From: Haliotis rubra | Lineage: Eukaryota | Length of the DNA: 64,000 nt | Assembly (NCBI RefSeq): GCF_003918875.1 | Contig: NW_025767314.1 | Location: 310,001 to 374,000 of the forward strand | Reading direction: 5' to 3' | In this document: positions 13,735 through 39,587 of the stretch, one piece after another | How the letters are laid out: every line of letters begins with the position of its first letter | How positions within the stretch are numbered: position 1 is the stretch's first letter | Notes under the pieces: model-generated | What the model was told of the DNA's origin: nothing | Seen by the model: only the letters and a program-made list of their open reading frames with translations | The model's database searches: none | Program-made: the position numbers and the translations under genes

Positions 13735-16140
13735 AATAATGATAATAGTAAATGTGCGTTTGTAACACGCCTTTCCCCTGTACAAGGAACATGCTCAAAG
13801 CGCTGACATGTAACAGTTATATACATATGTACGGGAGGGGTGCGAGGTGTGGCGGATATAGTTGGTTGTGTGAGAGGAACACAAGTGGGTCTTTAGCAAG
13901 CGATTAAATGGGGTAAAGTCAACTGCTGATTTATGGCCAAAAGGGAGATGGTTCAACAGTAGAGGGGCAGAACAAGCAAAGGATTTCCTTCCAAATATTT
14001 CAAGTTTATAGCAAGGTGCAAAGAGCAAGTTCTGATTTTGAGAGCGGAGCTCATTTCTGAGATGTAAGGTATAAGGAGTTCTCGTTGGTATTCTGGATTT
14101 GCGGCATGGTGACATTGATAATCAAAACACAACAATTTAAGTAATTCTTGACAGGAACCCAGTGCAGGGTTGTCATGACAGTGGGAATGTTTAGAAGTTC
14201 TGCTGATGATTCTGGCGGCTGTATTTTGGACCTGCTGCAACTTTGAGAGGAGCTTCTGTGAGATACCAAAAATAAGACTATTGCAGTAATCGAGTCTTGG
14301 GATAACAAGTCCCTGAACAAGACTGTGTGCTGCGTCTCGACTGATGAGATGGCGTATTCTGCCAATGACTCTCAAATGGAAGAAGCATACCCTGCACAGT
14401 TGATAGACATGAGCGTCCATGGTCAGTCGTGAGTTCAGCATTACTCCGAGATTTTTACTTCAGAGTGAGCTACCAAGATTGTGTTGAGGTTGACTTGTTT
14501 CCGCAGATGTCTGTAGTCAACAACCATCAGTTCGGTCTTGTCATCGTTTAGTTTCAGCAAGTTGTTAGTCATCCGACACTTAACATCTTTAGTGCAATCT
14601 GTGATGTGATGAAGGCGTACTTGAAAGTCTTTACCATATGAAATGTCCAGAAGTTGGGTGTCATTTGAAAATGAATGATGGAGAATCATGCTTGGCAATC
14701 AGATCCGCCACATTTGTCGTGTATGAAATGAAAAGAAGCGGGTTAAGTACATATCCCTGGGGTATAACACAGTGGATCAAGGAGCTTCGTGATTGCATGT
14801 TTTCTTGGAGAACAGCCTGACGTCTTCTTTCAAGATAAGATTGTAACCAGATTAAGGGTCCTCCATGAATTGCAAATTGTCCCTTGAGTCTATCCAGAAG
14901 GAGGTCGAGGAGGATGAGAGTAGCCAGTTTTCCTACATCAACAGCTGCGAGCAAGTCACTGGAGACTAGTTGGCTCTCTACTGTGGTTCTACCTGTTGGC
15001 TGATTGAAATTTATCCAAAAGTGAAAACACAGAAAAGTGAGACGAATGTTAACAGCTCTCTAGGGTATCTTTTTTATGAACTTCAGGTTAGAGACAGATC
15101 TTAAGTTTTAAGAATGTTAGGATCGAGATTATTCTTTTTTAGCAAAGGGGTAATGTTNNNNNNNNNNNNNNNNNNNNNNNNNNNNNNNNNNNNNNNNNNN
15201 NNNNNNNNNNNNNNNNNNNNNNNNNNNNNNNNNNNNNNNNNNNNNNNNNNNNNNNNNNNNNNNNNNNNNNNNNNNNNNNNNNNNNNNNNNNNNNNNNNNN
15301 NNNNNNNNNNNNNNNNNNNNNNNNNNNNNNNNNNNNNNNNNNNNNNNNNNNNNNNNNNNNNNNNNNNNNNNNNNNNNNNNNNNNNNNNNNNNNNNNNNNN
15401 NNNNNNNNNNNNNNNNNNNNNNNNNNNNNNNNNNNNNNNNNNNNNNNNNNNNNNNNNNNNNNNNNNNNNNNNNNNNNNNNNNNNNNNNNNNNNNNNNNNN
15501 NNNNNNNNNNNNNACACATCATTCATACGTCCGTACGTACATACATACATACAAACATACATACATAAATAAGTACATACATACATACATACACACAGAT
15601 ATACACACAGATAACGAACATTTTGTAGATGCAGATGTGGAACGTAGCAAGGTGTTTTTACGTATCATACCAGGCTCTATGTGTGCCCGAAGTTTCAGTA
15701 TTGGAAAACACTCATACCTGCATACTGTCAATGTCATCGAACGATCTAGTCCGAATTAAACTCTGAGCTATGATTTATTGATTGTATTTGATCGATGGAA
15801 GGATTTCCAGCGGTCAAACGCTACAGATAACAACTACATATTTGAATGAATCTGGGAAGACACCATTTGCCAAACTACTGTTTACCAACTTTGTCATCAC
15901 TGGGAGAAACAAATCATTGAATTCTTTTACCAAAGCTGTGGGAATCGCGTCTAAAAGACATGTAGATTTACAGAAAATCTTCAGTACTTCCTGTTCGGAA
16001 TATGTTTGAAACTCTGCAAGTAGTGTGCAAGAAAACCCCTTGCTATCTGTAGAAGTGTCAGCCTGGGCTCTAGCACAAGAAGGAATGAATCAGGCCAATC
16101 TTGGACCAAAAAAAATCATCGAAAAAGTCAGGAAGATCAT
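13735..16140 (-). mobile_element. Degenerate L2/CR1-like LINE (reverse transcriptase), spanning an assembly gap
   Basis: Successive ORF2 pieces: KSTCLLDAIPT..LVNSSLANGVFPDSFK (~15840-16000), ITPLLKKNNLDP, LILLDL, VIPQGYVLNPLLF, DTQL, LKLNDDKTE, RLDYCNSL, LQQVQNTAAR. Frameshifted; (TAA)n tail at ~13735. Confidence 0.88.
15158..15513. other. Assembly gap (N run) next to a (CATA)n microsatellite at 15514-15600
   Basis: Run of N followed by CATA repeats. Confidence 0.95.
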
Positions 16141-19939: not shown

Positions 19940-22900
19940 TTGGAATACAATGACTCAGTCAACCAAGTCAGCGAACCTGACCCATTAGTCGCCTCTGATG
20001 ACAGGCACGTGGTTGATGAAAACCAATTCTAACCCGGATATCCACGTGTGGAATACAATGACTCAATCTACCAAGTCAGCGAGCCTGACCCATTAGTCGT
20101 CTCAGACAACAGGCACATGTGAAGAGCAATTCTAAACCGGAAATCCACGTGTTGGAATACAATGACTCGGTCAAGTAACTATGCGAACTTTACACATTAG
20201 TCGCCTCTGACGATAGGCACATGTGAAGAGCAATTCTAACCCGGATATCCACCTGTTGGAATACAATGACTCAGTCAACCAAGTCAGCAAACCTGACCTA
20301 TTAGTCGCCCCTGACGACAGGCACATGTGAAGAGCAATTCTAACCCGGATATCGACGTGTTGGAATACAATGACTAGGTCAGCCAATTCAGCGAACCTGA
20401 GCCATTAGTCGCCTCTGACGACAGGCACGTGGTTGATGAAGGGCATTTTCAACCCGGATATCCACATGTTGGAATGCAATGACTCGGTCAACCAAGTCAG
20501 AGAACCTGTGCCATCAGTCGCCTCTGACGACAGGCACATGTGAAGAGCAATTCTAACCCGGATATGCACATGTTGGAATGCAATGATTTTGTCAACCAAG
20601 TCAGCGAGCCTGACCCATTAGTCGCTTCTGACGACAGGCACGCGGATGATGAAGAGCAATTCTAACCCGGATATCCACGTGTCGGAATACAATGACTCAG
20701 TCAACCAAGTCAGCGAGCCTGACCCATTAGTCGCCTTTGACGACAGGCACGTGGTTGATGAAAACCAATTCTAACCTGGATATCCACATGTTGGAATGCA
20801 ATGACTCGGTCAACCAAGTCAGCGAGCCTGACCCATTAGTCGCCTCAGACGACAGGCACATGTGAAGAGCAATTCTAACCCGGATATCCACGTGTTGGAA
20901 TACAATGACTCGGTCAACTAACTCAGCGAACTTTACACATTAGTCGCCTCTGACGACAGGCACATGCGAAGATCAATTCTAACCCGGATATCCACGTGTT
21001 GGAATGCAATGACTCAGTCAACTAAGGCAGCGAGCCTGACCCATAAGTCGCCTCTGACGACAGACACATGTGAAGAGCAATTCTAACCCGGATATCCACG
21101 TGTTGGAATACAATGACTCGGTCAACTAAGGCAGCGAGCCTGACCCATAAGTCGCCTCTGACGACAGGCACATGTGAAGAGCAATTCTAACCTGGATATC
21201 CACGTGTTGGAATACAATGACTAGGTCAACCAAGTCAGCAAACCTGACCTATTAGTCGTCCCTGACGACAGGCACATGTGAAGAGCAATTCTAACCCGGA
21301 TATCGACGTGTTGGAATACAATGACTCGGTCAGCGAACCTGAGCCATTAGTCGCCTCTGACGACAGGCACGTGGTTGATGAAGGGCATTTCCAACCCGGA
21401 TATCAACATGTTGAAATGCAATGACTCGGTCAACCAAGTCAGAGAACCTGCGCCATTAGTCGCCTCTGACGACAGGCACATGTGAAGAGCAATTCTAACC
21501 CGGATATGCACGTGTTGGAATGCAATCATTTTGTCAACCAAGTCAGCGAGCCTGACCCATTAGTCGCCTCTGACGACAGGCACGCGGATGATGAAGAGCA
21601 ATTCTAACCCGGATATCCACGTGTTGGAATGGAATGACTCGGTCAACCAAGTCAGTGAACTTGACCCATTAGTCGCCTCTGACGATAGGCACATGTGAAG
21701 AGCAATTCTTACCCGAATATCCACGTGTTGGAATGCAATGACTTGATCAACCAAGTCAGCGAACTTGACACATTAGTTGCCTCTAACGATAGGCACATGT
21801 GGAGAGCAATTATAATCCTGATATCCACATGTTGGAATACAATGACTTGGTCAATCAAGTCAGCGAACTTGACCCATTAGTCGCCTCTGACGATAGGCAC
21901 ATGTGAATAGTAATTCTAACCCGGATAACCACATGTTGGAATGCAATGACTAGGTAAACCAAGTCAGCGAACTTTACACATTAGTCGCCTCTGACGATAG
22001 ACACATGTGAAGAGCAATAACCCGGATATCCACGTGTTGGAATTCAATGACTCAGTCAACCAAGTCAGCGAGCCTGACCCATTAGTCCCCTCTGACGACA
22101 GGCACATGTGAAGAGTAATTCTAACCCTGATATCCACGTGTTGGAATGCAAAAACTTGGTCAACCAAGTCAGCGAACATTACACACTATTCGCCTCTGAC
22201 GATAGGCACATGTGTAGAGCAATTCTAACCCGGATATCCACGTGTTGAAATACAATGACTCGGTCAACCAAGTCAGCAAACTTTACACATTAGTCGCCTC
22301 TAACGACAGGCACATGTGAAGAGTAATTCTTACCCGGATAACCACATGTTAGAATGCAATGACTAGGTAAACCAAGTCAGCGAACTTTACACATTAGTCG
22401 CCTCTGACGATAGGCACATGTGAAGAGCAATTCTAACCCGGATATCCTCGTGTTGGAATACAATGACTCAGTCAACCAAGTCAGCGAGCCTGACCCATTA
22501 GTCGCCTTTGACGACAGGCACGTGGTTGATGAAAACCAATTCTAACCGGGATATCCACGTGTTGGAATGCAATGACTCGGTCAACCAAGTCAGCGAACCT
22601 GACCCATTAGTCGCCTCAGACGACAGGCACATGTGAAGAGCAATTCTAACCGGGAAATCCACGTGTTGGAATACAATGACTCGGTCAACTAACTCAGCGA
22701 ACTTTACACATTAGTCGCCTCTGACGACAGGCACATGCGAAGATCAATTCTAACCCGGATATCCACGTGTTGGAATGCAATGACTCAGTCAACTAAGGCA
22801 GCGAGCCTGACCCATAAGTCGCCTCTGACGACAGACACATGTGAAGAGCAATTCTAACCCGGATATCCACGTGTTGGAATACAATGACTCGGTCAACTAA

Positions 22901-25900
22901 GGCAGCGAGCCTGACCCATAAGTCGCCTCTGACGACAGGCACATGTGAAGAGCAATTCTAACCTGGATATCCACGTGTTGGAATACAATGACTAGGTCAA
23001 CCAAGTCAGCAAACCTGACCTATTAGTCGCCCCTGACGACAGGCACATGTGAAGAGCAATTCTAACCCGGATATCGACGTGTTGGAATACAATGACTCGG
23101 TCAGCCAGTTCAGCGAACCTGAGCCATTAGTCGCCTCTGACGACAGGCACGTGGTTCATGAAGGGCATTTCCAACCCGGATATCAACATGTTGAAATGCA
23201 ATGACACGGTCAACCAAGTCAGAGAACCTGCGCCATTAGTCGCCTCTGACGACAGGCACATGTGAAGAGCAATTCTAACCCGGATATGCACGTGTTGGAA
23301 TGCAATCATTTTGTCAACCAAGTCAGCGAGCCTGACCCATTAGTCGCCTCTGACGACAGGCACGCGGATGATGAAGAGCAATTCTAACCCGGATATCCAC
23401 GGGTTGGAATGGAATGACTCAGTCAACTGAGGCAGCGAGCCTGACCCATAAGTCGCCTCTGACGACAGACACACGCGATGAGCAATTCTAACCCGGATAT
23501 CCACATGTTGGAATACAATGACTCGGTCAACTAAGGCAGCGAGCCTGACCCATAAGTCGCCTCTGACGACAGGCACATGTGAAGAGCAATTCTAACCTGG
23601 ATATCCACGTGTTGGAATACAATGACTAGGTCAACCAAGTCAGCAAACCTGACCTATTAGTCGCCCCTGACGACAGGCACATGTGAAGAGCAATTCTAAC
23701 CCGGATATGCACGTGTTGGAATGCAATCATTTTGTCAACCAAGTCAGCGAGCCTGACCCATTAGTCGCCTCTGACGACAGGCACGCGGGTGATGAAGAGC
23801 AATTCTAACCCGGATAACCACGTGTTGGAATGGAATGACTCAGTCAACTAACTCAGCGAACTTTACACATTAGTTGCCTCTAACGATAGGCACATGTGAA
23901 GAGCAATTATAATCCTGATATCCACATGTTGGAATACAATGACTTGGTCAATCAAGTCAGCGGACTTGACACATTAGTCGCCTCTAACGATAGGCACATG
24001 TGGATAGCAATTATAATCCTGATATCCACGTGTTGGAATACAATGACTCAGTCAACTGAGGCAGTGAGCCTGACCCATAAGTCGCCTCTGACGACAGACA
24101 CACGTGAAGAGCAATTATAACCCGGATATCCACGTGTTGGAATACAATGACTCAGTCAACTAAGTCAGCGAACTTTACACATTAGTCGCCTCTGACGATA
24201 GGCACATGTGAAGAACAATTCTAACCTGGATATCCACGTGTTGGAATACAATGACTCAATCTACCAAGTCAGCGAGCCTGACCCATTAGTCGTCTCAGAC
24301 GACAGGCACATGTGAAGAGCAATTCTAACCCGGAAATCCACGTGTTGGAATACAATGACTCGGTCAAGTAACTATGCGAACTTTACACATTAGTCGCCTC
24401 TGACGATAGGCACATGTGAAGAGCAATTCTAACCCGGATATCCACCTGTTGGAATACAATGACTCAGTCAACCAAGTCAGCAAACCTGACCTATTAGTCG
24501 CCCCTGACGACAGGCACATGTGAAGAGCAATTCTAACCCGGATATCGACGTGTTGGAATACAATGACTAGGTCAGCCAATTCAGCGAACCTGAGCCATTA
24601 GTCGCCTCTGACGACAGGCACGTGGTTGATGAAGGGCATTTTCAACCCGGATATCCACATGTTGGAATGCAATGACTCGGTCAACCAAGTCAGAGAACCT
24701 GTGCCATCAGTCGCCTCTGACGACAGGCACATGTGAAGAGCAATTCTAACCCGGATATGCACATGTTGGAATGCAATGATTTTGTCAACCAAGTCAGCGA
24801 GCCTGACCCATTAGTCGCTTCTGACGACAGGCACGTGGATGATGAAGAGCAATTATAACCCGGATATCCACATGTTGGAATGCAATGACTCTGTCAACCA
24901 AGTCAGCGAACTTTACACATTAGTCGCCTCTGACGATAGTCACATGTGAAGTGCAATTCTGACCGGGATATCCACGTGTTGGAATACAATCACTCAGTCA
25001 ACCAAGTCAGCGGACCTTACCCATAAGTCGCCTCTGACGATAGGCACATGTGAAGAGCAATTCTAACCCGGATATCCACGTGTTGGAATACAATGACTCA
25101 GTCAACTAACTCAGCGAACTTTATACATTAGTCGCCTCTGACGATAGGCACATGTGTAGAGCAATTCTAACCCGGATATCCACGTGTTGAAATACAATGA
25201 CTCGGTCAACCAAGTCAGCAAACTTTACACATTAGTCGCCTCTGACGACAGGCACATGTGAAGAGTAATTCTAACCCGGATAACCACATGTTAGAATGCA
25301 ATGACTAGGTAAACCAAGTCAGCGATCTTTACACATTAGTCGCCTCTGACGATAGGCACATGTGAAGAGCAATTATAACCCTGATATCCACGTGTTGAAA
25401 TGCAATGACTCAGTCAACCAAGTCAGCGAGCCTGACCCATTAGTCGCCTCTTACTACGAACATGGGTTGATGCGGACCAATTCTAACCCGGATATCCTCG
25501 TGTTGGAATACAATGACTCGGTCAACCAAGTCAGCGAACCTGACCCATTAGTCGCTTCTGACGACAGGCACGTGGTTGATGAAGAGCAATTCTAAGCCGG
25601 ATATCCACATGTTGGAATGCAATGACTCGGTCAACCAAGTCAGCGAACTTGACACATTAGTCGCCTCTGACGATAGGCACATGTGAAGAGCAATTCTAAC
25701 CCGGATATCCACGTGTTGGAATACAATGACTCGGTCAACCAATACAGCGAACTTGACACATTACTCGCCTCTGACCACAGGCATGGGTTGATTAGGACCA
25801 TTTCTAACCCGGATATCCACGTGTTGGAATACAATGACTCAGTCAACCAAGTCAGCGAGCCTGACCCATTAGTCCCCTCTGACGATAGGCACATGTGAAG

Positions 25901-26130
25901 AGCAATTCTAACCCTGATATCCACTTGTTGGAATACAATGACTCAGTCAACCAAGTCAGCGAGCCTGACCCATTAGTCGCCTCTGACGACAGGCACGTGG
26001 TTGCTGAAGACCAATTCTAACCCGGATATCCACGTGTTGGAATACAATGACTCGGTCAACCAAGTCAGCGAGCCTGACCCATTAGTCGCCTCTGACGACA
26101 GGCACGTGGTTGATGAAGAGCAATTCTAAC
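19940..26130. repeat. Tandem satellite, ~105-110-bp monomer, roughly 55-60 copies, SINE-derived, with higher-order repeats
   Basis: Monomer TTGGAATACAATGACTCAGTCAACCAAGTCAGCGAGCCTGACCCATTAGTCGCCTCTGACGACAGGCACATGTGAAGAGCAATTCTAACCCGGATATCCACGTG. Identical translated blocks recur at offset 4193 and near-identical ones at ~1780. Confidence 0.97.
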
Positions 26131-26925
26131 CACGTGTCATCCATAGTGCCCTGGTCACCCAAGTCAATGAGATTGACCACCGATCCATTTAGTCGCTTAT
26201 TGTTAAGGATCAGAAGAACTACCCCGATGTTCCTCACATGGCAAAATGCACTGTGAGCAGGTAGAAGAATAGAAGACCGCCCAAGCCAAAAGACAGTTAC
26301 AGAATACGTTCCATTAAAATGAAAATGGTTAACTTCCAATTAAATCACTTCCTATGTGAAAGTTGACCTCAAGTGACTGACAACACAGAAAGTGTTGCAA
26401 AAGCGAAAACGACACATTTCCTCACATTTTGCCGTTTTGTAAACTATTCTATTGCTTATCTTGGTTCACAATGGTCCAGATCAGAATCGTACATATATTT
26501 CACATATTCGGTTGTCAATTAGAGAAGGTTTGAAGCTTATATAGTCACATAACGATGAGCTGAAGCGGGTATGGATGCTGCGACATAATTAAATATCTGG
26601 CAACAGTGTAATCAGTTTACATTTAGTATATAATGCATTATTATCAAATATTTCCCTGGCTCTTCTACGAAGGACTGAAAATCAAATTAATAAATGTTTG
26701 AATATCGTTCCGTAGATCTCTCTATCTCTCATGTGAATGTATTGACAAAGTCTGTTGAGTATTACTGAATAGAGTTACAGAAGGATGTCTTCGCTCGAAC
26801 TGTACTTGAGGTACCTGGTCGTGAATAAATGACTTACCAATAGTAAAATTAGCCATTTTGCAATGGACTTGAAGCTGATAAAAAACTATCAAAGAAAGGA
26901 TTTGCGTTCATGTTTATTTTATTTA

Positions 26926-28545: not shown

Positions 28546-31500
28546 ATGACAGCACTCTACCGGCGTCTGTGTGTTGTTGTTTGCGGTGAGTGCTTTTACA
28601 TTGTTTGTAAGCAAGGTAACCAGTAAACACTGCACCACATGGAACAATCTATTCATTGCTTGGTTCAGCTTCAGGGAGATCTACTATATATTTTAATACG
28701 ATAACTGCAATTAACTGAAGGCCATTTAATCCATTCAGGGAAACAGGAGTGAATAAGATACAAGTTATGGTCATGTCGACATTGTTATGTGTTTTTACCA
28801 CTTTGGCATATTGTGCAACACTCAAATCATATTCGATTGCTGATCTGTCCTTTTGTTTGGTTTGTTTGTTGTTTAACGCCGCACTCAGCAATATTCCAGC
28901 TATATGGCGGTGGTCTGTAAATAGTAGAGTCTGGACCAGACAATCCAGTGATCAACATCATGAACATCGATCTACGCAGTTGGGATACGATGACATGTGT
29001 CAACCAAGTAAGCGAGCCAGATCACCCGTTACGACAAGCATGGCTTTTTGAAGATTAATTCTAACCCGAATTATCACGGGTGATCAATCCATTCACTATA
29101 TACCGCGTTCCAGTCGTTTGTCATGAGGCTATTTCTGTTTAATACTGGTACTTTAGTGACACACTTGTGATGATACACAGGCCACTCAGATGTTATAGAC
29201 CGAGGAGTAGAACAGTGATTCCAGCATTATTTCTGAATAATATTTTTGATACAATTTTAGTTTTCAGAATAGCATTTGTTTCACTGCATTGTACAATAAT
29301 TATTATGATACAGTACTGGGTGGTTCTGAGTATCAGAATGTACATCTAAGATATAAAACGCATTTAAAAGGTCCCTGTCCCGACGAATAATCCTTACTAA
29401 CGTATTACCAAATTCTGACCTGTATTGTGGTGACGTGGTGTCCTGTGCACGAAGCTCAGGTCACAAATCGGTCAAGTTAAGCAGGGTCGAGCTCGGGGAA
29501 TCCTTGGATGTGTGACCGTGTTTGGCAGCTTGACTCCTGAGAGTTTCTAAAAACTGTCCTGATCCACAACGAAGCACATGTTATACATGTGGTCTCACCT
29601 TAGACAAGTGAGTTTTATTCAAAATTGCCTCTGTTCACCCAGCAGGAAAATGGGTACCCGGTGGAAAATGTCATGTGACTATAACCTTCTAGCGCCTAAC
29701 AGGCAGCTTGGGTTATCCAGGGTAATAATGTGCTGTGCTATTGATTGTTAGTGCTATGAGCAAACCTGGTGTGGAGTTTGGCGCTATATAAATGGACACA
29801 TTACTATAGCATGAATATTCAACAGGTATAATGACAATGATGGACACAATGTTAGGGGATTATAAAACTTGTGAAACATTTCCTAATACATATCAAAGGC
29901 TTATAATGTTTAGCCTTAGCACGTGTGGCCTTATCTTTTTCCTGTTGTTTTGTTTCTTTAGTTCTGCTGGCGAAAGTCGCATCTGCAGTGAGAGTAGACG
30001 TCGAGTGTAAATGGGAACGAGAAAGTAAACAGCTGTATTCAGTTTTCACGATGGACCTAAATATCAGCACTAAACATTTGATCAGCCTGAGTGCCCACAA
30101 TGTCACTGTTCTGGATGACAGTGGCATTGTTACAAGTCAGTCTGGCAGTATTACAGACCAAGCTGGAATTCTAAGAGCAAGCCTCGACATTGAATGTAGT
30201 GATGCCCAACATATTCGATGCGAATCATTTGGAATGGCTTACGACAAAACATCATTCAATAACCTGACCATCACACCGCACCTGGAATTTAATGGTGAGA
30301 CACAACTGACCGATTCCACTTAGCACTGAGTTCATGGAAGTTGGCTGGTTTTGTTGTTGTTTACGCCGCACTCAGCAATATTCCAGCTATATGGCGGCGG
30401 TCTGTATATAATCGAATCTGGACCAGACAATCCGGTGATGAGCCTCGGTATACGCAATTGGGATACAATGACATGTTTCAACCAAGTCAGCGATGCTGAC
30501 CACCCGGTCTCGTCTTACGACAGACACAGGTTGCTGACCCGTGGATTTCATGGATGCGAAAACTAGCTAGAAGGATAACCACAATGTGCTTGTCCATGTC
30601 TGCCTGTCCAACTGGTAACGTTATTCACCAACGTATCGCTGAAATGACTTACTTGGTCAATAGCTATACTAAGATTTCACAACCATTACGACACTCGAGC
30701 TCAAAAGGTGTTTAATCTCGCTTTCAACACACACTGACTCAATGTAACTCGCCAACTATTTTTTCTCCAGATAAGAGGACAGCAATTCATCCTTTTACGC
30801 CCCCTTATCAGAGACATGGTTATGGCTGTTTGTGTCGCTTTTATTTATGCTATGTGTATATTTACGTGAAAGAGATCACACGAGATTATGCGAGAAGCGC
30901 CCGTCTATGCATTTTTTGAACGATTAGACATGGGTACAATATGTGCAGCCCTTTTCCGGTGTCCCCCCGATGTGATATTGATGGAACATTAAAAGCGGCG
31001 TAAAAGTAAACTCACTCACTTATTGTATATCTCTATCTCGATGTAAGAGGCATGTATGAATTAAAATAAGATATTCTTTAATCATCAACACCGGTTTTAC
31101 GTTAAGATGTAATGTTGCTATGTTTTCACGTTGTAGTTGCTGCAAGAGGCGTTTCAGTCACACAGACGCCTTTAAAGGAGACCTACGGCGTAGGCGACGT
31201 CATACTGCTCACGTGTTCTGCGGTGTTTGGGGTTAACAGAACAAGGCTACGATGGATGATCAGTCACTCAAATACACCATCGACAGATACACACGTTCCT
31301 GTTCCTGTTGACAGTCCTCAAGCAAATAGTTTGACACTTGCAGACTGCTCCTTCCATGTTGTCAGCAAATATGTACACGTGCCCACTGAACATGGGGACA
31401 TAACTCTAACATGTTTTGCTGAAAATACATCTGAGTCCACTTCTCTCACCATCAGAAGTGGCAATGGTTTGTCATTTTTAACATTTATACAATGCCTCAA

Positions 31501-34500
31501 TGTTCTGACCATAACTTTGTTAATTTACAATTTTGTGTTTGTTTGTTGTTTAACGCCACACTCAGCAATATTCCAGCTATATGACTGCAGTCTGTAATAA
31601 TCGAATCTGGACCAGACAGTGATCAACTTCATGAGCATCCACTTGCATGACATGTGTCTGGACAGGACAATCCAGTGATCAACAGCATGAGCATCGATCT
31701 ACGCAAATGGGATACCATGACATGTGTCATCCAAGTCAACGACCCTGACCACCCCATCCCGTTAGTCGCCTGTTAGGACAAGCATGGGTTGCTGAAGACC
31801 AATTCTACTTACCCATTTGTGACCAGATGTCACTGATGTTCAGTTATCCATTCATACCAAGTTTCACGGCTCTTTTGCTTCGTCGGATAATCGACATTGG
31901 TTATTATCAAGCGTTGACGATTTATATATATATTTGAATATGTACATTCATGTATCCTTCGGATGTCATAAGCTTTAGTTTCATGGCACCGAAATATATT
32001 AGATATGTTATGATCGTGCGTACTGACATCATGTTCCTAATGTTTCAATGTGTCAGTTATCAAAATCTACCTGTATCTACATGTATAAATAAGTAAGTAT
32101 GCACTGTTACATTTCTATTTCCAGATAATCACAGCACCCATCTGTTTCTCTCGAGTATGCTTGTGTACACGCATTTCATCATCTTACCATGCATATTTGC
32201 TCTGTTTGGTGACAAAGTAACTTTCCGAGAACCAGGTAGGAATATATGAAGAAACGTACCTGTTCTTGAATATCACAACTTCGCGCAGAGAATTGAAATG
32301 TGTTGTCAAGGTTCTTCATCTTGAGTCAGTCTCCAGATATAATTTTGTATGATGATTATCTTTAGGTATTAGTCATGATTATTTTGTGTTTTGCAGGGAA
32401 AGTGTGTATGCGCAGATTTCGGACTGCTATCTCATTTCTTGTTGGCCTCACATTCTTCATATGGTGGATGATTGTACTCCGAGACCATCATCTCAGATCA
32501 TTAGGTTAGTGATTCTGATTTGTCTGGCAACCATAATTTCCAAACAAAATATTCTTGTTATCAAAATTGTTTTAATTGATGTGTTTTTTTCTTAACATGT
32601 GTTTTCCTTTACGCAGGTTATTTCATGTGTGCTGTGATAGAATTTATCTTCATATTGGGCTACACCCTAACGAGGTTCTCTGCAAACTTGTCGAAGCGCT
32701 TCGAGAAAAAATGTAAGATTTCTACAGTTAACAATGGCCTTGTATATGAAACGTGGTACTGTTTCCAAAACCTATCAACTACACGCTGAACGAAATTCTC
32801 CCAAGGCATTTAGAAGTTGGTGAAGTGATACAAAACAAATGTTATGGATAAAAACTTCATCTTTATTTGTTTCTCACGACGTTTCTGGGCTAGTTCTTGT
32901 CCCTTCTTCAATATCCACTTGGAGAACCATGACAGCACATTTCAATATCCACCTGAAGAAAGGGCAAGGACTAGCCCAGAAACGTCGTGAGATCCACCCG
33001 AAGAAAGGGCAAGGACTAGCCCAGAAATGTTGTGAGATCCACCTGAAGAAAGGGAAAGGACTAGCCCAGAAACGTCGTGAGAAACAAATAAAGAATAACG
33101 TTGTTATAAATAACATTTGTCTTGTAATACACGCTGAACCTTTACCCGAACTTGAGTGAGTAGGGGTTTACACCGCGTTTAGCAATATCCCAGCAATATC
33201 ACGTTGGGGACACCAGAAATGGGCTTCACACATTGTACCCATGTAGGGAATCGGACCCGGAGCTTCAGCGTGACGAGCGGACGCTTTTACCATTAGTTTA
33301 CGTCACCGCCCCTTTGCGAATTATAACTATAACATCTTTAGTCGCGTTATCGTTTTGAGTGAAAATAGCCTCCAACTCACTGTGTAAGACAAATTCGTTG
33401 ATTTATATTGCCAATATTGATGGATTATACTCACGGAGTTGGAGGAGGGGGAGTGTCACGGTGCAGAGATTTATATTAGATCCAATTTAGATGATTTCAA
33501 TATTCTTTAGTACATAGAATCTTGGCAACAAACCTACTTTTGTTTGAGATGGGATATGTAGAGAGTAAGTTATGTTCATTTTGTACATATTTACCAGAAA
33601 GCGGAATTCATCTCTTTTACGACTGTCCAAATTCTATAAGCATATGGAATCAACTTTTCACTTGGATAAGAACAAGAACAGATATCATTGAACACTGAAT
33701 ATCGATAAAAAGTAGATCATATTTGGATTTTCTGAAAAAAGAACGAAGTCCCTAATCTCCTGATAACAGTTGTCAAATTTACTCTTTTTAAAATACGCAT
33801 ATATACATGTACGCCAGCTTTCGATATGATCAGAAAGGAAATAAGTAAAGTTTACAATGTCGAGAAAAAACATGCAATGTCTTCTTGTATTTTTACCAAA
33901 TTTACGGGTCCGATTGCCATAAATTGTTTGATTGATATTAACTTAGACCCTGCTTATTTTCTTACAATGGAATCCGTTGTAATATGCTTGTCAATGTGGG
34001 ATATGCCAAGATCTGTAAACAAATGCATGATTTTATATTTTGCTGTTATTTGATGTCATGATTTTGTACCTAAAAATGGATGATAAAAATAAAGACCCGT
34101 GCACATTTGCTGACTCATACATTTGATGTGTACAGATCAGAGATATTTGCACAACTTGAGAGTAGCCACTTCCTATGGAGCCACCATGACGCCGACTATA
34201 TGCTGGATCATGATAAAGTGTTATGGAGGCACCAGCATCATAGGACTTGGTAGGTGCAGATGTCTTCGCTTCATCTGTTTACAGATTGCTTAATGGAAAC
34301 ATTGCTTTAATTTTGCTGTAGATTCTTCTTCTAAAATTCCGGCCAAACAATTAACATTGCTTCATTCTCTTTGTTTGTTTGTTGTTTAATGCCGCACTCA
34401 GCAATACACAAGCCATATGGCGGCTGCATGTAAGTTATCGAGTCTGGACCACACAATCCAGTGATGAACATCCTGAGCATTGATCTATACAATTGGGATA

Positions 34501-34771
34501 CGATGACATGTTACAACCAAGTCAGCGATCCTGGCCACCCGACCCCGTTAGTGGCCTCCCATCAGTATTTCTGATCAAACCTAATAATCAGATCCTCAAA
34601 ATACATAATGCTAATGGAAGCTGTTGAGCCGTATATATTGCTATTACATTGTCTCCATTAAATACAATTTCAGAGATCTTTTTCTGGATGGTGACGATCG
34701 GATGTTTTACCGGATTTGTTTGCGTCTCAAAGAGTCGAGAGGGAAAGTATTGGGAGATAAAATATTACTGA
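28546..34771 (+). CDS. Gene A: signal peptide + two Ig-like domains + five transmembrane segments (CD47-like architecture)
   Basis: Phase-1 GT-AG exons: 28546-28585 (MTALYRRLCVVVC), 29962-30294 (Ig-like D1, ...IECSDAQHIRCESFG...PHLEFN), 31137-31466 (C2-like D2, LTC..W..LTC), 32125-32235 (TM1 HLFLSSMLVYTHFIILPCIFALF), 32397-32504 (TM2 AISFLVGLTFFIWWMIVL), 32617-32712 (TM3 GYFMCAVIEFIFILGYTL), 34136-34249 (TM4 VATSYGATMTPTICWIMI), 34674-34771 (TM5 EIFFWMVTIGCFTGFVCV...KYWEIKYY*). AATAAA at 34908. Each Ig and TM exon has a homologous exon in paralog B. Probable 5'UTR exon ends at 28259. Confidence 0.82.
28853..29081 (-). mobile_element. SINE-like repeat (family 2, GCTTGTCGTAAGAGGCGACTAA core; Meta-SINE-like)
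   Basis: Matches near-full copies at 44737, 48909 and 57003; (AAAC)n tail. Confidence 0.8.
29438..29795 (+). mobile_element. 5S rRNA-derived SINE (SINE3-like)
   Basis: Head AAGTTAAGCAGGGTCGAGCTCGG...CTTGGATGTGTGACCG resembles the 5S rRNA internal promoter (A/C boxes). Body TGCCTCTGTTCACCCAGCAG.AAAATGGGTACCCGG; second copy at 42020. Confidence 0.72.
30350..30552 (-). mobile_element. SINE-like repeat (family 2)
   Basis: Family-2 consensus match. Confidence 0.75.
31535..31808 (-). mobile_element. SINE-like repeat (family 2) with internal duplication
   Basis: Family-2 consensus match. Confidence 0.75.
32861..33095 (+). ncRNA. Penelope-like terminal-repeat remnant with three tandem and one inverted minimal type I hammerhead motifs
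   Basis: 45-bp unit ATCCAC-CTGAAGA-AAGGGC-AAGGACTA-GCCCA-GAAAC-GTC-GTGAG, three copies (32947-33081), ending in AATAAA. Inverted copy at 32861-32912. Confidence 0.65.
33153..33313 (-). mobile_element. tRNA-derived SINE (family 1)
   Basis: Family-1 consensus match. Confidence 0.8.
33500..33860 (+). mobile_element. L1/Tx1-like LINE 3' fragment (zinc-binding region)
   Basis: Broken frame reads RILATNLLL..MGYVESKLCSFCTYLPESGIHLFYDCP, a CxxC...HxxxxC motif typical of LINE ORF2 C-termini. Confidence 0.65.
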
Positions 34772-35840
34772 CGTGCATGAAGTTGAAATTTGATAAAGTG
34801 ATGTGGCTGTGAATGGCATGTGAATGCATGGACAAAGTCAGATTATTACTGAATATAGTCACAGAAGGATGTCTTCTCTCTAACTGTATTTAAGGTACCT
34901 TGTCGTCAATAAAGTGTAAAGTACCTGAAAACGTTGACTTGCCTGTAGTACAATTAGCTATTTTGCAATGGCCATGAAGTTGATAGAGAACTACCAAAGA
35001 AGGGATTTGCATTAATGTTTATTTACATATTCACACACACACACGCGCGCGCGCACACACACACACATATGCATCGGGAGACTTCTAGTATGTAATAGTT
35101 GGTCTTTTTATGTGAACTCCACACCGATGTATGCAATGAGTGGTTCTTGCTAGGTGGATTCATGTCCTCAACATGGATATTCATTTGGTAGTTTTACCTA
35201 GTTCAAATTGAAAATATGCTTATGGCTTGTTTGAAAGTGATGACATGAGAAGTCAAATAATAATAGTCACAGCAATGACTTTTAGTCCATTGGATAAATT
35301 GAAAATGAATCCGTTACACGATATTTAGCTTCCTGACAAGGATCTATCCATGAACCTCGTTCGAACAGTTAATAATGACATTTTTCGTACAGAGTGCCTT
35401 ATGTTATCGCGGGAATCTATTAATTTCTATTAAATTCTCTTATCCCATGTCTTCCATTCTCTCTTGTTGGAAACAGAGACGAAGGCGATGAGCGATCCGA
35501 CGGTGAAAATCAACTAGACAATTTCTGCAACTACATAACATGTTTCTGTTTATGCATGAAGAAGGTGAACTTAAATCTTCGTTACTGTAGTGTTACTATT
35601 ATTAAAGTTACATTTAATATATTACTACAATTATCGAATATAATTTGACCTTTGTACACGTTTATGATATTGTACGTGTATAATACCTTGTGTAGAGACC
35701 TCCAGTTGCATCTCAGTTCTCATGATCATCCAACAAATACCTGGAGTTGTAACTGCCCCACAAGACAATGTCACTCGAGAGTTGTAGAGAAGTCTTTCAT
35801 CTGCTGGGATAAATAGGCGAAACATATGATCATCCACTAA

Positions 35841-36008
35841 AGGGGCGGTGGGGTAGCCTAGTGGTTAAAGCGTTTGCTCGTCACGCCAAAGACCTGGGTT
35901 CGTTTTCCCAAAAGACACAATGTGTGAAGCCCATTTCTGGTGTCGCCGGCCGTGATATTGCTTGAATATTGATAAAGCGCGTTAAAACCAAACACGCTCA
36001 CTCACTCA
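35841..36008 (+). mobile_element. tRNA-derived SINE (family 1)
   Basis: GGGGCGGTGGGGTAGCCTAGTGGTTAAAGCG...GGGTTCG...(CACT)n, flanked by CATCCACTAAA on both sides (target duplication). Confidence 0.88.
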
Positions 36009-37034
36009 TCCACTAAAATGAAACACGAAGGGTGCTTTGTTCGCCTTACAATTTGTAATAGCTAGGCAATACAACGTAAACCCTATACTATTGATCATCT
36101 ATTCCGTTATCATTCATCCTATCTTGAGAGCGGTATATAAAAAAAGAAATTTTTTCTGCATCATGAGGTCATATTTTACACTTGACACCTTGTTAAAGAA
36201 CACGTGGATGTTAATACTGTTAATATCAAATAAACCTGCAGATACGATGCAGCTGTTTCTTTAGATTCTCTAAACAATGTGGTTATTACGCGTCATACGA
36301 TCCTGGAATCATGATCATTTGATAGTCTAGTATAGTCATTATCGCAACGTCACTAGTCAATCTTATAGAATCATGTTGAGACCACCACAGATTGTTTATT
36401 TAGATACAAGATCTAATTGTCATAACAAACCTCTCCGACGAAAAAAAGTTACCCTGAATTAGTAATGAATACGATAGAAACCGTCTGCGGGTCGAATAAC
36501 CCCGGACACGGGTTTTACTCGTCATGACTGCTACCTACCGTCTTTCTCGAAGCCTTCTGGCAGCAGTCGGACACCAGCATAAAGAATGAAGAATACCGCT
36601 TCCATAACGAAAAAACACAGGAACCCTGGAAAACCATGGATTGATGTTTTAACAGTACGTCAATCTGTATACGATATATCGATTACTGAAAGTATCGAAT
36701 ATGCAATGCCCTTTAGAAAATGGTCAAATGTAACATGGTCAATTTAGGGTTAGAATTTCTGTAAAGCACAGATTGTAGTACTTTTTTTGTATGGTATATT
36801 CATAGTTTGAAGGAATGGCAGCCATGCAGATTTAGACTTGTCAGAGGGGTACACAAAGTACTTGACTTCGACTACTAATTATCAGACTTCCATTTTTGTG
36901 ACAGCTGTGAAAATGTGGGTAAGATCGCTGACCTTGTGTGAGGGTGATTAGGTAGCTCTGTCTGAGAGTGTGGGTTCGAATACTCAACTAAATGTATTAG
37001 CACTTATGTACTAGTGCTATACTGATGGTGAGTT

Positions 37035-37283
37035 AGTGAGTGAGTATAGCTTTACGCGCCACTCGGCAATATTTTATGATAATATGTATATGACGGCGGT
37101 CTGTAAATAATCGAGTCTTGACCAGACAATAAAGTGATGAACAGCATGAGCATCGATCTACGCAATTGGGAACTGATGACGTGTGTCAAATATGTCAGCG
37201 AGCCTGACCACCCGATCCCGTTAGTCGCCTCTTACGACAGCCATGGGCTACTGAAGATCAATTCTAACGCGGATCTTCACTGG
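37035..37283 (-). mobile_element. SINE-like repeat (family 2)
   Basis: Near full-length family-2 match. Confidence 0.8.
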
Positions 37284-37385
37284 TCACTGTACTGAGAAAG
37301 TGTAAACCGAACTATAACATATGTTACACGTATCCACTCGCCAAATTGTCTCAATAGAACAGAAATCCAACATAGCACATATATA

Positions 37386-38874
37386 CTTAGCAGCGTGAAA
37401 ATTAGCAATAAAAACGTCAGTACGAATTCAAAATTAGATAGGCACTGTAATCAAATCATTACATAAATGGACATAATAAGCGGATCAAAGCCTTTTTGTG
37501 TACAATATCCTGACACATCAGTGAATAACTCAGCACAATTCCAAGACATTACGTTGGCAGACCATTCAGACTCTTGACTTCAGTATCTAGTGTGACCACC
37601 AAAGCGGCAATAACTGCAGAACAGCGTCTATGCATGGAGTGCACCAATCGATTGATGAAGGCCATTGGCACCTGGAATCACACTCTGAGATAGGCCTGGC
37701 GCAATAAATCGGCTGTGTTCGGCCTTGGTATGACATTATTCAGTCTCTTCTGAATTTCATCCCAAAGATGTTCAATTGGGTTTAAATAAGGACTAAGGGC
37801 TGGCCACCGCATAATGTTGACACCGTTCTGCTGTAGGAAGTCCCGTGTAGCTCGGGCAGTATTGGCCCGGGCGTTATCATGCTGGAAAATGATGTTCCGG
37901 CGAAATTTGGTATGACGTGGGGTCTGACAGCTTGGTCGATGTAGCGCACCGCTGTGATGCCGCCTCCTCTCCCTGGACCAAGGTTCTGGAACACCACAGG
38001 ACCCACTCTCTGGTTCAGATTTATTCCACCCCATACCATGATGCTTGCACCTCCCCATGAGTCTCTTTCCATAACACATTGGTCTGAGTAACGCTGGCCA
38101 CGTCGTCGCCATATTCTTGTTCTGCCATCTGCAGTTGGTACGCAGTACCGAATCTCATCTGTGAACAGAACAGTTCTCCATTGCCTGTATCACCAGTTTT
38201 GGTGTTGTAGGGCAAACTGTTCACGCCGATGACGAGGTGAGGATAGGTCAACGGTCAGGTCTACGGCAATGGAGGTTCCCGCTGTTAAGACGTCGGAGTA
38301 CTGTATCAATACCGATTGGTCTTCCGTGTGTTCCCACTGTCTGGCGTGCTGTTTCGGATGCCTGCACGAAGGGATTCTGTACATGCTGTCGCACAACATG
38401 GCGGTCTTGTCGTCTTGTGGTCACCTTGGTCTGCCAGTAAGGGGGCGATCATTTGTGGTGTTGGTGGCCCGGAAACGTTGCTGCAGCCTGTAGATGGTCC
38501 GAATGCGGACCTGGAAGTGATTGGCAACGGCTTGTGCAGTGTGGCCAGCTTCAAGTCTTCCAAGCGCCTGGTTCCTCTCAGCTGTAATGAGTTGCGGCAT
38601 CCTGCTGACGTTGTAATGTGAATGTTTCAACCAGGTTTGGGGGTGCATTTTATAGGGCTGGTCCTTGTGAACAGCAAGTGCAGCATGAGTTGCATGAAAA
38701 ACATGGAGACCACCGTACCATCGCCGAGATCAGGTTGCGGTTTGGGGAAGGAATGTCATTGCTCAGGTAAGTTGGAGATGTTGTCAAAAATATACAATCA
38801 ACACATTAAATGAGTTGACAGTTATCCGTTTCTGCAAAGGAAAATTCCAAACTGACGTACCTTTTGCTGCTTAG
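37386..38874 (-). mobile_element. Full-length frameshifted Tc1/mariner transposon in an intron of gene B
   Basis: Transposase from ATG 38600 (MPQLITAERNQALGRLEAG...DRPLTGRPR) through LFTDE, GGASIMVWGGI, FQHDNA and WPALSPYLNPIEHLWDE to GGHTRY* (~37580). Short TIRs CT(T/A)AGCAGC with TA flanks. Confidence 0.92.
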
Positions 38875-39224
38875 TATATATTATGTTAGTGTTGCCTTAG
38901 GTTACAAGTGTACACATATCAACGCCATCTTGTAATTGTTATTCTATTGTGTGTATGATATAAAGTACGACTTCTATTTTTTAAAGTTTACTTTAACATG
39001 TAATTACCTGGGGTGTGAGCATCAGGAATCACAATGCCCCACCATACAACAAAGATCAATCCTGTAAACAATGAAATGAAGGCTCTGCGCGTTCTGCTCC
39101 TCGTTGTTTCTGAAATATTAGGGAATAGGAAAATGAGTTATATGAAACCTTGAACTCAAAACTATACACGGGATGGAACGTTCAAAATGAAACTATACAC
39201 CCATGTGTGATGGTGGCCGAAATT

Positions 39225-39587
39225 ATTTTGTTTGTTTAATTGACGCTACACTCAGCAGTATCGTTACACAATCGAGCAGACAATCCAGTGATCAACAGCA
39301 TGAGCATCGATCTACGCAATTGGGATATGATAAGATATGTCAACTTAGTCAGCGAGTCTGACCACCTGATCCCGCTTGTCACCTCTTACGACAAGTGGCG
39401 TTCGCACGTCACGCTGAAGACCCGGGTTCGATTCCCCACATGGGCAAAATGTGTGAAGCTCATTTCTGGAGTCCCCCGCCGTGATATCGCTGGAATATTG
39501 CTAAAAGCGGCGTAAACTAAACTCAATCAGTCAGTCTTACGACAAGCAATGGTTACTGAAGATCAATTCTAACCCGGATCTTCACGG
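39225..39587 (-). mobile_element. Family-2 SINE with a nested 5'-truncated family-1 tRNA-SINE (39396-39534, + strand)
   Basis: The insert is flanked by a 12-bp target duplication TCTTACGACAAG (39384-39395, 39535-39546). Confidence 0.85.

What the first reader, a model, noticed from the sequence alone, without database searches (positions are those of the whole stretch)
28546..34771. Invertebrate Ig + five-transmembrane protein with a CD47-like architecture
Seen in sequence: a signal peptide and two Ig-like exons are followed by five phase-1 exons that each carry one hydrophobic segment, then a ~14-aa tail ending KYWEIKYY. These small exons are not visible in the ORF track. Each has a homologous exon in the inverted paralog B (e.g. 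RYLHNLRVATSYGATMTPTICWIMIK vs RLLYNSRVTLSCGAVTTPGICWMIMR, both 114 nt), which independently supports the model. Established: an Ig ectodomain on a 5-TM domain is the hallmark of vertebrate CD47 and its poxvirus homologs, and is otherwise rare. Inference: this may be an undescribed molluscan family that is convergent with, or remotely homologous to, CD47 and could act as a self-marker. No sequence similarity to CD47 is claimed, and TM4 is only moderately hydrophobic.
Basis: partly seen in the sequence, partly recalled or inferred. Interest (0 to 1): 0.88.

Follow-up and report, generated by a model that had tools for sequence, protein, structure and literature searches.

The report
Abalone two-domain, five-helix membrane protein
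This is a real, expressed abalone gene for a surface protein with a two-module outer part (at least one module antibody-like) on five membrane-spanning helices, laid out like vertebrate CD47 but with no detectable relatedness to it and no known function.

Summary
All splice sites are GT-AG and all introns are phase 1. The 409-aa product is identical to RefSeq XP_046545781.1 (Haliotis rubra LOC124255882, "uncharacterized protein"). Spliced transcript contigs from four runs in two studies join exons 2-8 as modelled.

The protein has a signal peptide, two ~105-aa cysteine-containing modules and five uncharged hydrophobic helices. Module 2 is Ig-like; the Ig fold of module 1 is unproven. Charge distribution supports an N-out/C-in topology in all three paralogs.

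The family is small: three clustered genes (A, B, C), seen only in three Haliotis species. It has at least three frameshifts, a premature TAG and a transposon in one intron. It is intact in H. rufescens and H. asinina.

The membrane domain is conserved (dN/dS 0.14-0.20; 36-40% identity between paralogs). The outer part diverges faster (0.26-0.38; 22-26%).

Kinship with CD47 is not supported. The CD47 Pfam models do not hit, and CD47's hallmark inter-domain disulfide is not conserved. The fold test was void because the AlphaFold models had pLDDT of about 40.

Verdict: an undescribed, genus-restricted membrane protein family with a CD47-like layout. Function is unknown and interest is moderate.

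The parts
28546..28585 (+). Gene A exon 1: start codon and most of the signal peptide (aa 1-13, plus one base)
   Evidence: Identical to the N-terminus of RefSeq protein P0001. A 34-40 nt first exon is conserved in the orthologs. Not covered by the read stretch.
29962..30294 (+). Exon 2: end of the signal peptide and ectodomain module 1 (aa 14-124). C29, C92 and C100 are conserved. The Ig fold is not demonstrated.
   Evidence: (spliced contigs). No Pfam, PDB or profile hit.
31137..31466 (+). Exon 3: ectodomain module 2, Ig-like (aa 125-234), with C151...W164...C217 and an extra C195
   Evidence: Pfam Ig_3 at E 3.9e-4, below the curated cut-off. All 51 weak PDB profile hits are Ig domains. Spliced contigs.
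32125..32235 (+). Exon 4: TM1 (aa 235-271), with the invariant S-x-HLFLS motif at its outer end
32397..32504 (+). Exon 5: basic inner loop 1 and TM2 (aa 272-307)
32617..32712 (+). Exon 6: TM3 (aa 308-339), with invariant G308-Y309 at the top and invariant E316 inside the membrane
34136..34249 (+). Exon 7: basic inner loop 3 and TM4 (aa 340-377). This is the best conserved stretch: R-V-A-x-S-x-G-A-x3-P-x2-C-W.
34674..34771 (+). Exon 8: TM5, the conserved tail R-E-x-K-x-W and the stop codon (aa 378-409)
34772..34931 (+). 3' UTR, with AATAAA at 34908-34913. The longest transcript contig ends at 34931.
35430..41967 (-). Paralog B, tail-to-tail with A and a pseudogene in this assembly. Blocks: module 1 at 41967-41643, module 2 at 41060-40760, TM1 at 39857-39726, TM2 at 39110-39008, TM3 at 36625-36539, TM4 at 35800-35687, TM5 at 35524-35430. 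Frameshifts lie near 41897, 41711 and 40979. A TAG lies at 35516-35514.
   Evidence: The B gene is called as an intact gene in H. rufescens (P0010, 413 aa) and H. asinina (410 aa).
37681..38729 (-). Tc1/mariner-type transposase remnant inside the TM2-TM3 intron of pseudogene B
   Evidence: Open frames with transposase-like text. The identification is from my own knowledge and was not searched.
63092..63427 (+). Paralog C, module 1 exon. The gene continues beyond the window to contig position C2424:381695 and is intact over 7 exons with the same module order.

Best explanation
Gene A (H. rubra LOC124255882) encodes a glycosylated plasma-membrane protein of a small Haliotis-restricted family with three clustered paralogs.

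Shown:
- A cleavable signal peptide is followed by two cysteine-bearing ~105-aa modules. The second is Ig-like; the first is Ig-sized and of unproven fold.
- The membrane domain has five helices, one per exon.
- It ends in a short basic tail with the conserved motif R-E-x-K-x-W.
- The gene is transcribed and spliced as modelled.
- The membrane domain evolves under tighter constraint than the ectodomain.

Inferred:
- Topology is N-terminus outside, tail inside.
- The diverging ectodomain is the ligand- or partner-binding part of a cell-surface recognition or adhesion molecule.
- The conserved five-helix bundle, with an invariant glutamate in TM3, serves for lateral association with another membrane protein or for signalling through the tail. 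This is broadly how CD47 works with integrins.

On present evidence the resemblance to CD47 is one of layout, not demonstrable descent.
For: Gene model and expression.

Conserved 8-exon structure, with TM exons of 111/108/96/114 nt in the three A orthologs.

Five helices:
- DSSP on both AlphaFold models gives five helices in residues 235-403, although at low confidence.
- Five uncharged hydrophobic segments occur in A, B and C, with KD 0.9-2.2.
- Lys+Arg counts are 6-7, 3-7 and 3-5 on the loops predicted inside, against 0-1 and 1 on those predicted outside, in every paralog.
- There are 5-7 N-x-S/T sequons and 6 conserved Cys in the ectodomain.

Module 2 as Ig-like.

Constraint:
- dN/dS is 0.14-0.20 for the TM domain and 0.26-0.38 for the ectodomain.
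- Paralog identity is 36-40% in the TM domain and 22-26% in the ectodomain.
- E316, G308-Y309, the TM4 motif and the tail motif are invariant.

No curated family matches.
Against: - No function, partner, tissue or subcellular location is known.
- Both structure models are unreliable (mean pLDDT 42.7 and 40.0). Helix packing and the fold of module 1 are therefore unknown.
- TM4 of gene A is only moderately hydrophobic (KD 1.1), and no dedicated topology predictor was available.
- An ectodomain dN/dS of 0.26-0.38 shows relaxed or mixed constraint, not positive selection.
- RefSeq isoform X2 (P0007) skips TM1, which would upset the topology. It was not seen in the listed contigs.
Confidence: 0.6

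Rival explanations
1. The family is a true but very remote homolog of vertebrate and poxviral CD47. On this reading an Ig ectodomain on the CD47 five-helix fold was inherited from a common bilaterian ancestor and gained a second ectodomain module.
For: - Same order of parts: signal peptide, Ig-type ectodomain, five closely spaced helices, short cytoplasmic tail.
- Possibly similar gene layout. Human CD47 has the IgV domain in exon 2, and exons 8-13 form alternative tails. That leaves exons 3-7 for the membrane domain (my inference from PMC10902115). Here there are five membrane-domain exons.
- An invariant Gly sits at the outer top of helix III (G308), as does G191 in CD47 (PMC8410850).
- The A orthologs have a Cys in the TM4-TM5 outer loop (C368), which is where CD47 has C245.
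- CD47's TM fold has no known relatives, so very deep divergence is conceivable.
Against: - The Pfam models CD47 (PF04549) and V-set_CD47 (PF08204, accession from memory) give no hit at E<=10 for A, its two orthologs and B.
- PF04549 against the whole genome gives only E 1.8-5.6 matches on other contigs.
- PDB sequence and profile searches do not reach CD47.
- The loop cysteine is absent from B and C, whereas the C15-C245 pair is kept even in poxviral CD47.
- There is no SWF linker motif.
- There are two ectodomain modules instead of one IgV.
- Relatives are known only from one gastropod genus.
Confidence: 0.12
2. The protein spans the membrane four times, not five. The weakly hydrophobic 'TM4' would then be a re-entrant or peripheral segment, which puts the tail outside or changes the topology.
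For: TM4 of gene A has KD of only 1.1 over 18 residues. It is rich in Ser, Thr and Gly and contains a conserved Pro. No dedicated predictor was run.
Against: - The segment is uncharged in all paralogs and more hydrophobic in B (KD 1.85) and C (1.51).
- It is flanked by a basic loop on one side and a nearly neutral loop on the other. With four spans the Lys/Arg-rich tail would face outward, against the positive-inside rule.
- Both AlphaFold models draw it as a long helix.
- It is the most conserved segment of the protein, as expected for a buried helix.
Confidence: 0.1
3. The ectodomain is a fast-evolving recognition surface under diversifying selection, for example in gamete or pathogen recognition. 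The family would then be a lineage-specific arms-race product rather than a housekeeping surface protein.
For: - Module 1 is only 61% identical between H. rubra and H. rufescens, against 85% for the TM domain.
- Ectodomain dN/dS is about twice that of the TM domain.
- One paralog has been lost in one species.
- There are six nonsynonymous differences in the ectodomain among four transcriptomes.
Against: - Whole-domain dN/dS stays well below 1 (0.26-0.45).
- Polymorphism is 6 nonsynonymous to 6 synonymous in the ectodomain, which is not unusual.
- No site-level test was possible with three species.
- Tissue of expression is unknown.
Confidence: 0.18

Closest known systems
CD47 (integrin-associated protein) of vertebrates and its poxvirus homologs
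   Same: - Order of parts: signal peptide, N-terminal Ig-type ectodomain, five closely packed membrane helices with short loops, short cytoplasmic tail.
- N-out/C-in topology.
- The ectodomain evolves faster than the membrane domain.
- The membrane domain is spread over five small exons.
   Different: - No sequence or profile similarity.
- Two ectodomain modules instead of one IgV.
- The ECD-ECL2 disulfide, SWF linker and GLG motif of CD47 (PMC8410850) are absent or not conserved across the family.
- It has its own invariant motifs: S-x-HLFLS, a Glu in TM3, RVA-S-GA-P-CW, and RE-K-W.
- Known only in Haliotis.
Single-pass IgSF adhesion and recognition molecules of invertebrates (I-set/Ig_3 type ectodomains)
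   Same: Module 2 has the canonical Cys-Trp-Cys spacing and a weak Ig_3 match. Both modules lie on phase 1-1 exons of about 330 nt. The ectodomain carries several N-glycosylation sequons.
   Different: It is anchored by five helices rather than one helix or GPI. Module 1 has no detectable Ig signature.

Membership tests
CD47 | Membrane domain matches the Pfam CD47 transmembrane model (PF04549) | tested here: not met
   No hit at E<=10 for P0001, P0008, P0009, P0010 or the isolated TM domain. The model run against the whole genome gives only E 1.8-5.6 matches on other contigs.
CD47 | A single N-terminal IgV domain of the V-set_CD47 type (PF08204; accession from memory) | tested here: not met
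   There are two modules. The only Pfam hits are Ig_3 (weak) and VTT_dom (noise).
CD47 | Five membrane helices with N-terminus outside, tail inside and short loops | tested here: met
   Five uncharged hydrophobic segments and a positive-inside charge pattern in all three paralogs. Five helices by DSSP in both low-confidence models. No dedicated topology predictor was available.
CD47 | Inter-domain disulfide between an ectodomain Cys and a Cys in the TM4-TM5 outer loop, kept even in viral homologs (PMC8410850) | tested here: not met
   C368 lies in that loop in the three A orthologs but is absent from B and C. The six conserved ectodomain cysteines can pair among themselves.
CD47 | SWF linker before helix I and a GLG motif at the top of helix III (PMC8410850) | tested here: not met
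   The linker reads S-x-HLFLS and helix III starts with G-Y. Only the single Gly position is comparable.
CD47 | Three-dimensional fold of the five-helix bundle superposes on full-length CD47 | tested here: inconclusive
   The AlphaFold2 models have mean pLDDT of 42.7 (TM domain) and 40.0 (full length). Foldseek against the PDB gave no match at E<=0.001 and nothing meaningful.
Immunoglobulin superfamily | At least one domain with the Ig signature (Cys...Trp...Cys, about 65 residues apart) and a profile match | tested here: inconclusive
   Module 2 has C151, W164 and C217. Ig_3 scores E 3.9e-4 and 21.3 bits against a cut-off of 30. All 51 PDB profile hits at E<=1 are Ig domains, best E 0.09. Module 1 has no Pfam hit, no PDB hit and no profile similarity to module 2.

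The most novel reading that the evidence does not exclude
The Haliotis family is the first invertebrate relative of CD47. This would mean an ancient bilaterian Ig-plus-five-helix receptor whose membrane fold, so far thought unique to vertebrates and poxviruses, predates vertebrate immunity.
Probability: 0.1. Interest if true: 0.8.

Novelty: new variant of a known kind. Interest (0 to 1): 0.45.

Why it matters
[quoted passage not shown] A second, independent family that puts an Ig-type ectodomain on a compact five-helix anchor offers a natural comparison. It can be used to ask what such an anchor does: lateral association, signalling, or orientation of the ectodomain.

If a good structure later shows the same fold, it would push the origin of CD47 back to early bilaterians. 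If it does not, this is a clean case of convergence.

The practical value today is modest. The gene is already in RefSeq as an uncharacterized protein, the family is tiny and restricted to one genus, and nothing is known of its function.

Tried and rejected
1. AlphaFold2 on the TM domain (3 orthologs) and on the full length (3 orthologs plus paralog B) gave pLDDT 42.7 and 40.0. This is too low for fold comparison. The Foldseek PDB run on the TM model returned only noise.

2. ESM Atlas feature searches with the TM domains of A and B gave no usable hit.

3. I tried to deepen the alignment with exon fragments of paralogs B and C. MAFFT stretched and misplaced the short fragments, so these alignments were not used for folding or searching.

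4. The exhaustive HMMER search used module 1 only. Apart from the gene itself it found five long repetitive proteins (P0002-P0006) that matched a Ser/Thr-rich stretch several times. I judged these spurious. Because the spliced protein had no reference until that search returned it, the TM domain itself was searched only through the word-indexed database.

5. A weak VTT_dom hit (E 0.26-0.94) and archaerhodopsin hits (E 0.3) for the TM domain were treated as chance.

6. A gene-model artefact is rejected by the spliced contigs.

7. Four literature searches turned up no reported invertebrate CD47 and no exon-by-exon account of CD47's membrane exons.

8. The N runs at 15158-15513, 58165-58323 and 58714-59295 were left untouched.
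Full report
**1. The observation**

The eight exons are 28546-28585, 29962-30294, 31137-31466, 32125-32235, 32397-32504, 32617-32712, 34136-34249 and 34674-34771.
- All have AG/GT borders and every intron is in phase 1.
- Together they give one open frame of 409 codons ending KYWEIKYY.
- The window is eukaryotic DNA of about 40% GC, with SINE copies in the introns.
- The assembly has 1.378 Gb in 2855 contigs.

An exhaustive HMMER search with the translated exon 2 returned one strong hit, P0001. It has 409 aa and is identical to my spliced model. Its sources name it XP_046545781.1, [quoted passage not shown]. So the model is right, and automatic annotation had already predicted it.

**2. Transcript evidence**

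Four small runs from two studies hold exon 3 at 0.69-0.80 of its sampled words, but hold only 0.16-0.20 of the whole 4.9-kb stretch. That is what a spliced RNA would give.
- Laid on 29900-35000, their contigs fall exactly on the exon blocks and skip the introns.
- X8 record 8 (1590 nt) covers 29961-30293, 31136-31465, 32124-32232, 32394-32502, 32615-32712, 34136-34247 and 34672-34931 without interruption in the record. It continues 236 nt further upstream.
- X1, X4 and X9 show the same joints.
- Transcripts therefore run through all five small exons to the stop codon and end about 18 nt after an AATAAA at 34908-34913.
- Exon 1 itself was outside the laid stretch.

**3. Anatomy of the protein**

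Residues 1-23 form a hydrophobic signal peptide.

Module 1 (24-124) has three cysteines conserved across paralogs: C29, C92 and C100.
- It has a D-A-x-x-I-x-C stretch before C100 that recalls the Ig F strand.
- It has no Pfam hit, no PDB profile hit, and no profile similarity to module 2.
- Its Ig fold is an inference only.

Module 2 (125-234) has the canonical C151...W164...C217.
- It gives a weak Ig_3 match: E 3.9e-4 and 21 bits against a cut-off of 30.
- A family profile finds 51 PDB chains at E<=1, every one an Ig domain, although the best E-value is only 0.09.

Residues 235-409 contain five hydrophobic segments, one per exon.
- In an alignment of A, its two orthologs, B and C, each segment is free of charge apart from an Asp and a Lys at the inner end of B's TM1 segment, one boundary Arg in TM2 and TM3, and an invariant glutamate in TM3 (E316).
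- The loops predicted inside carry 6-7, 3-7 and 3-5 Lys+Arg. Those predicted outside carry 0-1 and 1, in every paralog.
- TM4 is the weakest in A (KD 1.1) but stronger in B (1.85) and C (1.51). It is also the best conserved stretch of the whole protein.
- Both AlphaFold models, although unreliable, draw five helices here.
- I conclude that five spans with N-out/C-in topology is the best reading. A four-span alternative would leave the basic tail outside.

**4. The family**

In this genome the family is confined to contig C2424. It consists of gene A, paralog B lying tail-to-tail with A at 35.4-42.0 kb, and paralog C starting at 63092 and running 8.6 kb beyond the window. A lone module-1 exon almost identical to C's sits on contig C476.

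C is open over seven exons with the same order of parts. Its TM exons measure 117/114/87/114/95 nt, all in phase 1.

But B is broken here:
- The reading frame shifts near 41897, 41711 and 40979.
- A TAG at 35516-35514 replaces a Trp codon of TM5.
- A Tc1/mariner-like remnant lies in one intron.

In H. rufescens and H. asinina the same convergent neighbour is called as an intact gene, of 413 aa (P0010) and 410 aa respectively. So B supports the exon model as a decayed copy, not as a working paralog.

Database searches found relatives only in H. rubra, H. asinina and H. rufescens.

**5. Evolution**

Between species, module 1 is 61-84% identical, module 2 is 65-80% and the TM domain is 85-94%.
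- Nei-Gojobori dN/dS is 0.26-0.38 for the ectodomain and 0.14-0.20 for the TM domain.
- Between paralogs, the ectodomain is 22-26% identical and the TM domain 36-40%.
- Invariant residues include S-x-HLFLS at the outer end of TM1, G308-Y309 and E316 in TM3, R-V-A-x-S-x-G-A-x3-P-x2-C-W in TM4, E378 before TM5, and R-E-x-K-x-W in the tail.
- Among four transcriptomes I saw 6 nonsynonymous and 6 synonymous differences in the ectodomain, 2 and 2 in the TM segments, and 2 nonsynonymous differences in the tail. This is ordinary, not the hyper-polymorphism of an allorecognition locus.

**6. How it most likely works**

The shown facts fit a glycosylated surface protein. Its diverging two-module ectodomain would make the contacts. 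Its conserved five-helix domain would do something that tolerates little change.

An invariant acidic residue in the middle of a helix, together with a short conserved basic and aromatic tail, suggests lateral pairing with another membrane protein, or signalling through a bound cytoplasmic factor. This is inference. No partner, tissue or location is known.

**7. Comparison with CD47**

The layouts agree: an Ig-type ectodomain, five tightly spaced helices and a short tail. Fenalti et al. (PMC8410850) state that CD47 is the only known five-helix immune receptor and that its TM fold resembles nothing else, so the layout is indeed rare.

In human CD47, exon 2 carries the IgV domain and exons 8-13 form alternative tails (PMC10902115). 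By my inference that leaves exons 3-7 for the membrane domain, which is reminiscent of the five small exons here.

Membership, however, fails wherever I could test it:
- Neither CD47 Pfam model appears among the hits at E<=10 for four family members.
- PF04549 against the whole genome finds only chance matches on other contigs.
- PDB sequence searches do not reach CD47.
- The inter-domain disulfide, conserved even in poxviral CD47, has a possible counterpart (C368) only in the A orthologs, not in B or C.
- The SWF and GLG motifs are absent.

The one test that could still show deep kinship, fold comparison, was void because the models had pLDDT of about 40. With only four usable sequences the alignment was too shallow.

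**8. Verdict**

This is an undescribed, apparently genus-restricted family with a CD47-like layout, most likely convergent. I put remote homology to CD47 at about 10%. The self-marker idea has no evidence behind it.

Novelty: a new variant of a known kind (an IgSF-type surface protein on a multi-span anchor). Interest is moderate, and would be high only if a reliable structure shows the CD47 fold.

Noticed in passing
window 19940-26131: A 104-bp satellite in 59 tandem copies (85% matches) raises GC to about 48%. By eye, its unit resembles the 3' part of the SINE found in the introns of gene A.
   Followed up: partly
window 37681-38729 (-): A Tc1/mariner-like transposase remnant lies inside an intron of pseudogene B. 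It was recognised from its translated text only and not searched.
   Followed up: no
window 30345-30520, 31540-31790, 34365-34550 and 28860-29030: Copies of one SINE sit in the introns of gene A. In the transcriptome contigs these places reach word depths of thousands to hundreds of thousands, so the element is abundantly transcribed genome-wide.
   Followed up: no
window 32860-33100: About three direct repeats of roughly 45 bp, plus an inverted partner, lie in intron 6 of gene A.
   Followed up: no
L001/L003 (contig C476:10548-10850): A lone module-1 exon is nearly identical to that of paralog C, with no other family exons within 28 kb. It is either a haplotig piece or a stray exon copy.
   Followed up: partly
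P0007 (RefSeq isoform X2 of gene A): This predicted isoform skips exon 4 (TM1, 37 aa). Because all exons are phase 1-1 the frame is kept, but the topology would be upset. It was not seen among the listed transcript contigs.
   Followed up: partly
L006:18540-18653 region (H. rufescens paralog B, intron after the TM4 exon): The tblastn hits show six to seven tandem partial copies of the TM4 motif (AVITPGICW[MV]MIR) downstream of the TM4 exon of H. rufescens B. Paralog C of H. rubra also has a second TM4-like copy about 160 bp downstream of its TM4 exon.
   Followed up: no
window 1-8722 and L007:1-1674: An SLC6 (PF00209) transporter gene lies upstream of the cluster both here and in H. asinina, so the neighbourhood is syntenic.
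   Followed up: partly
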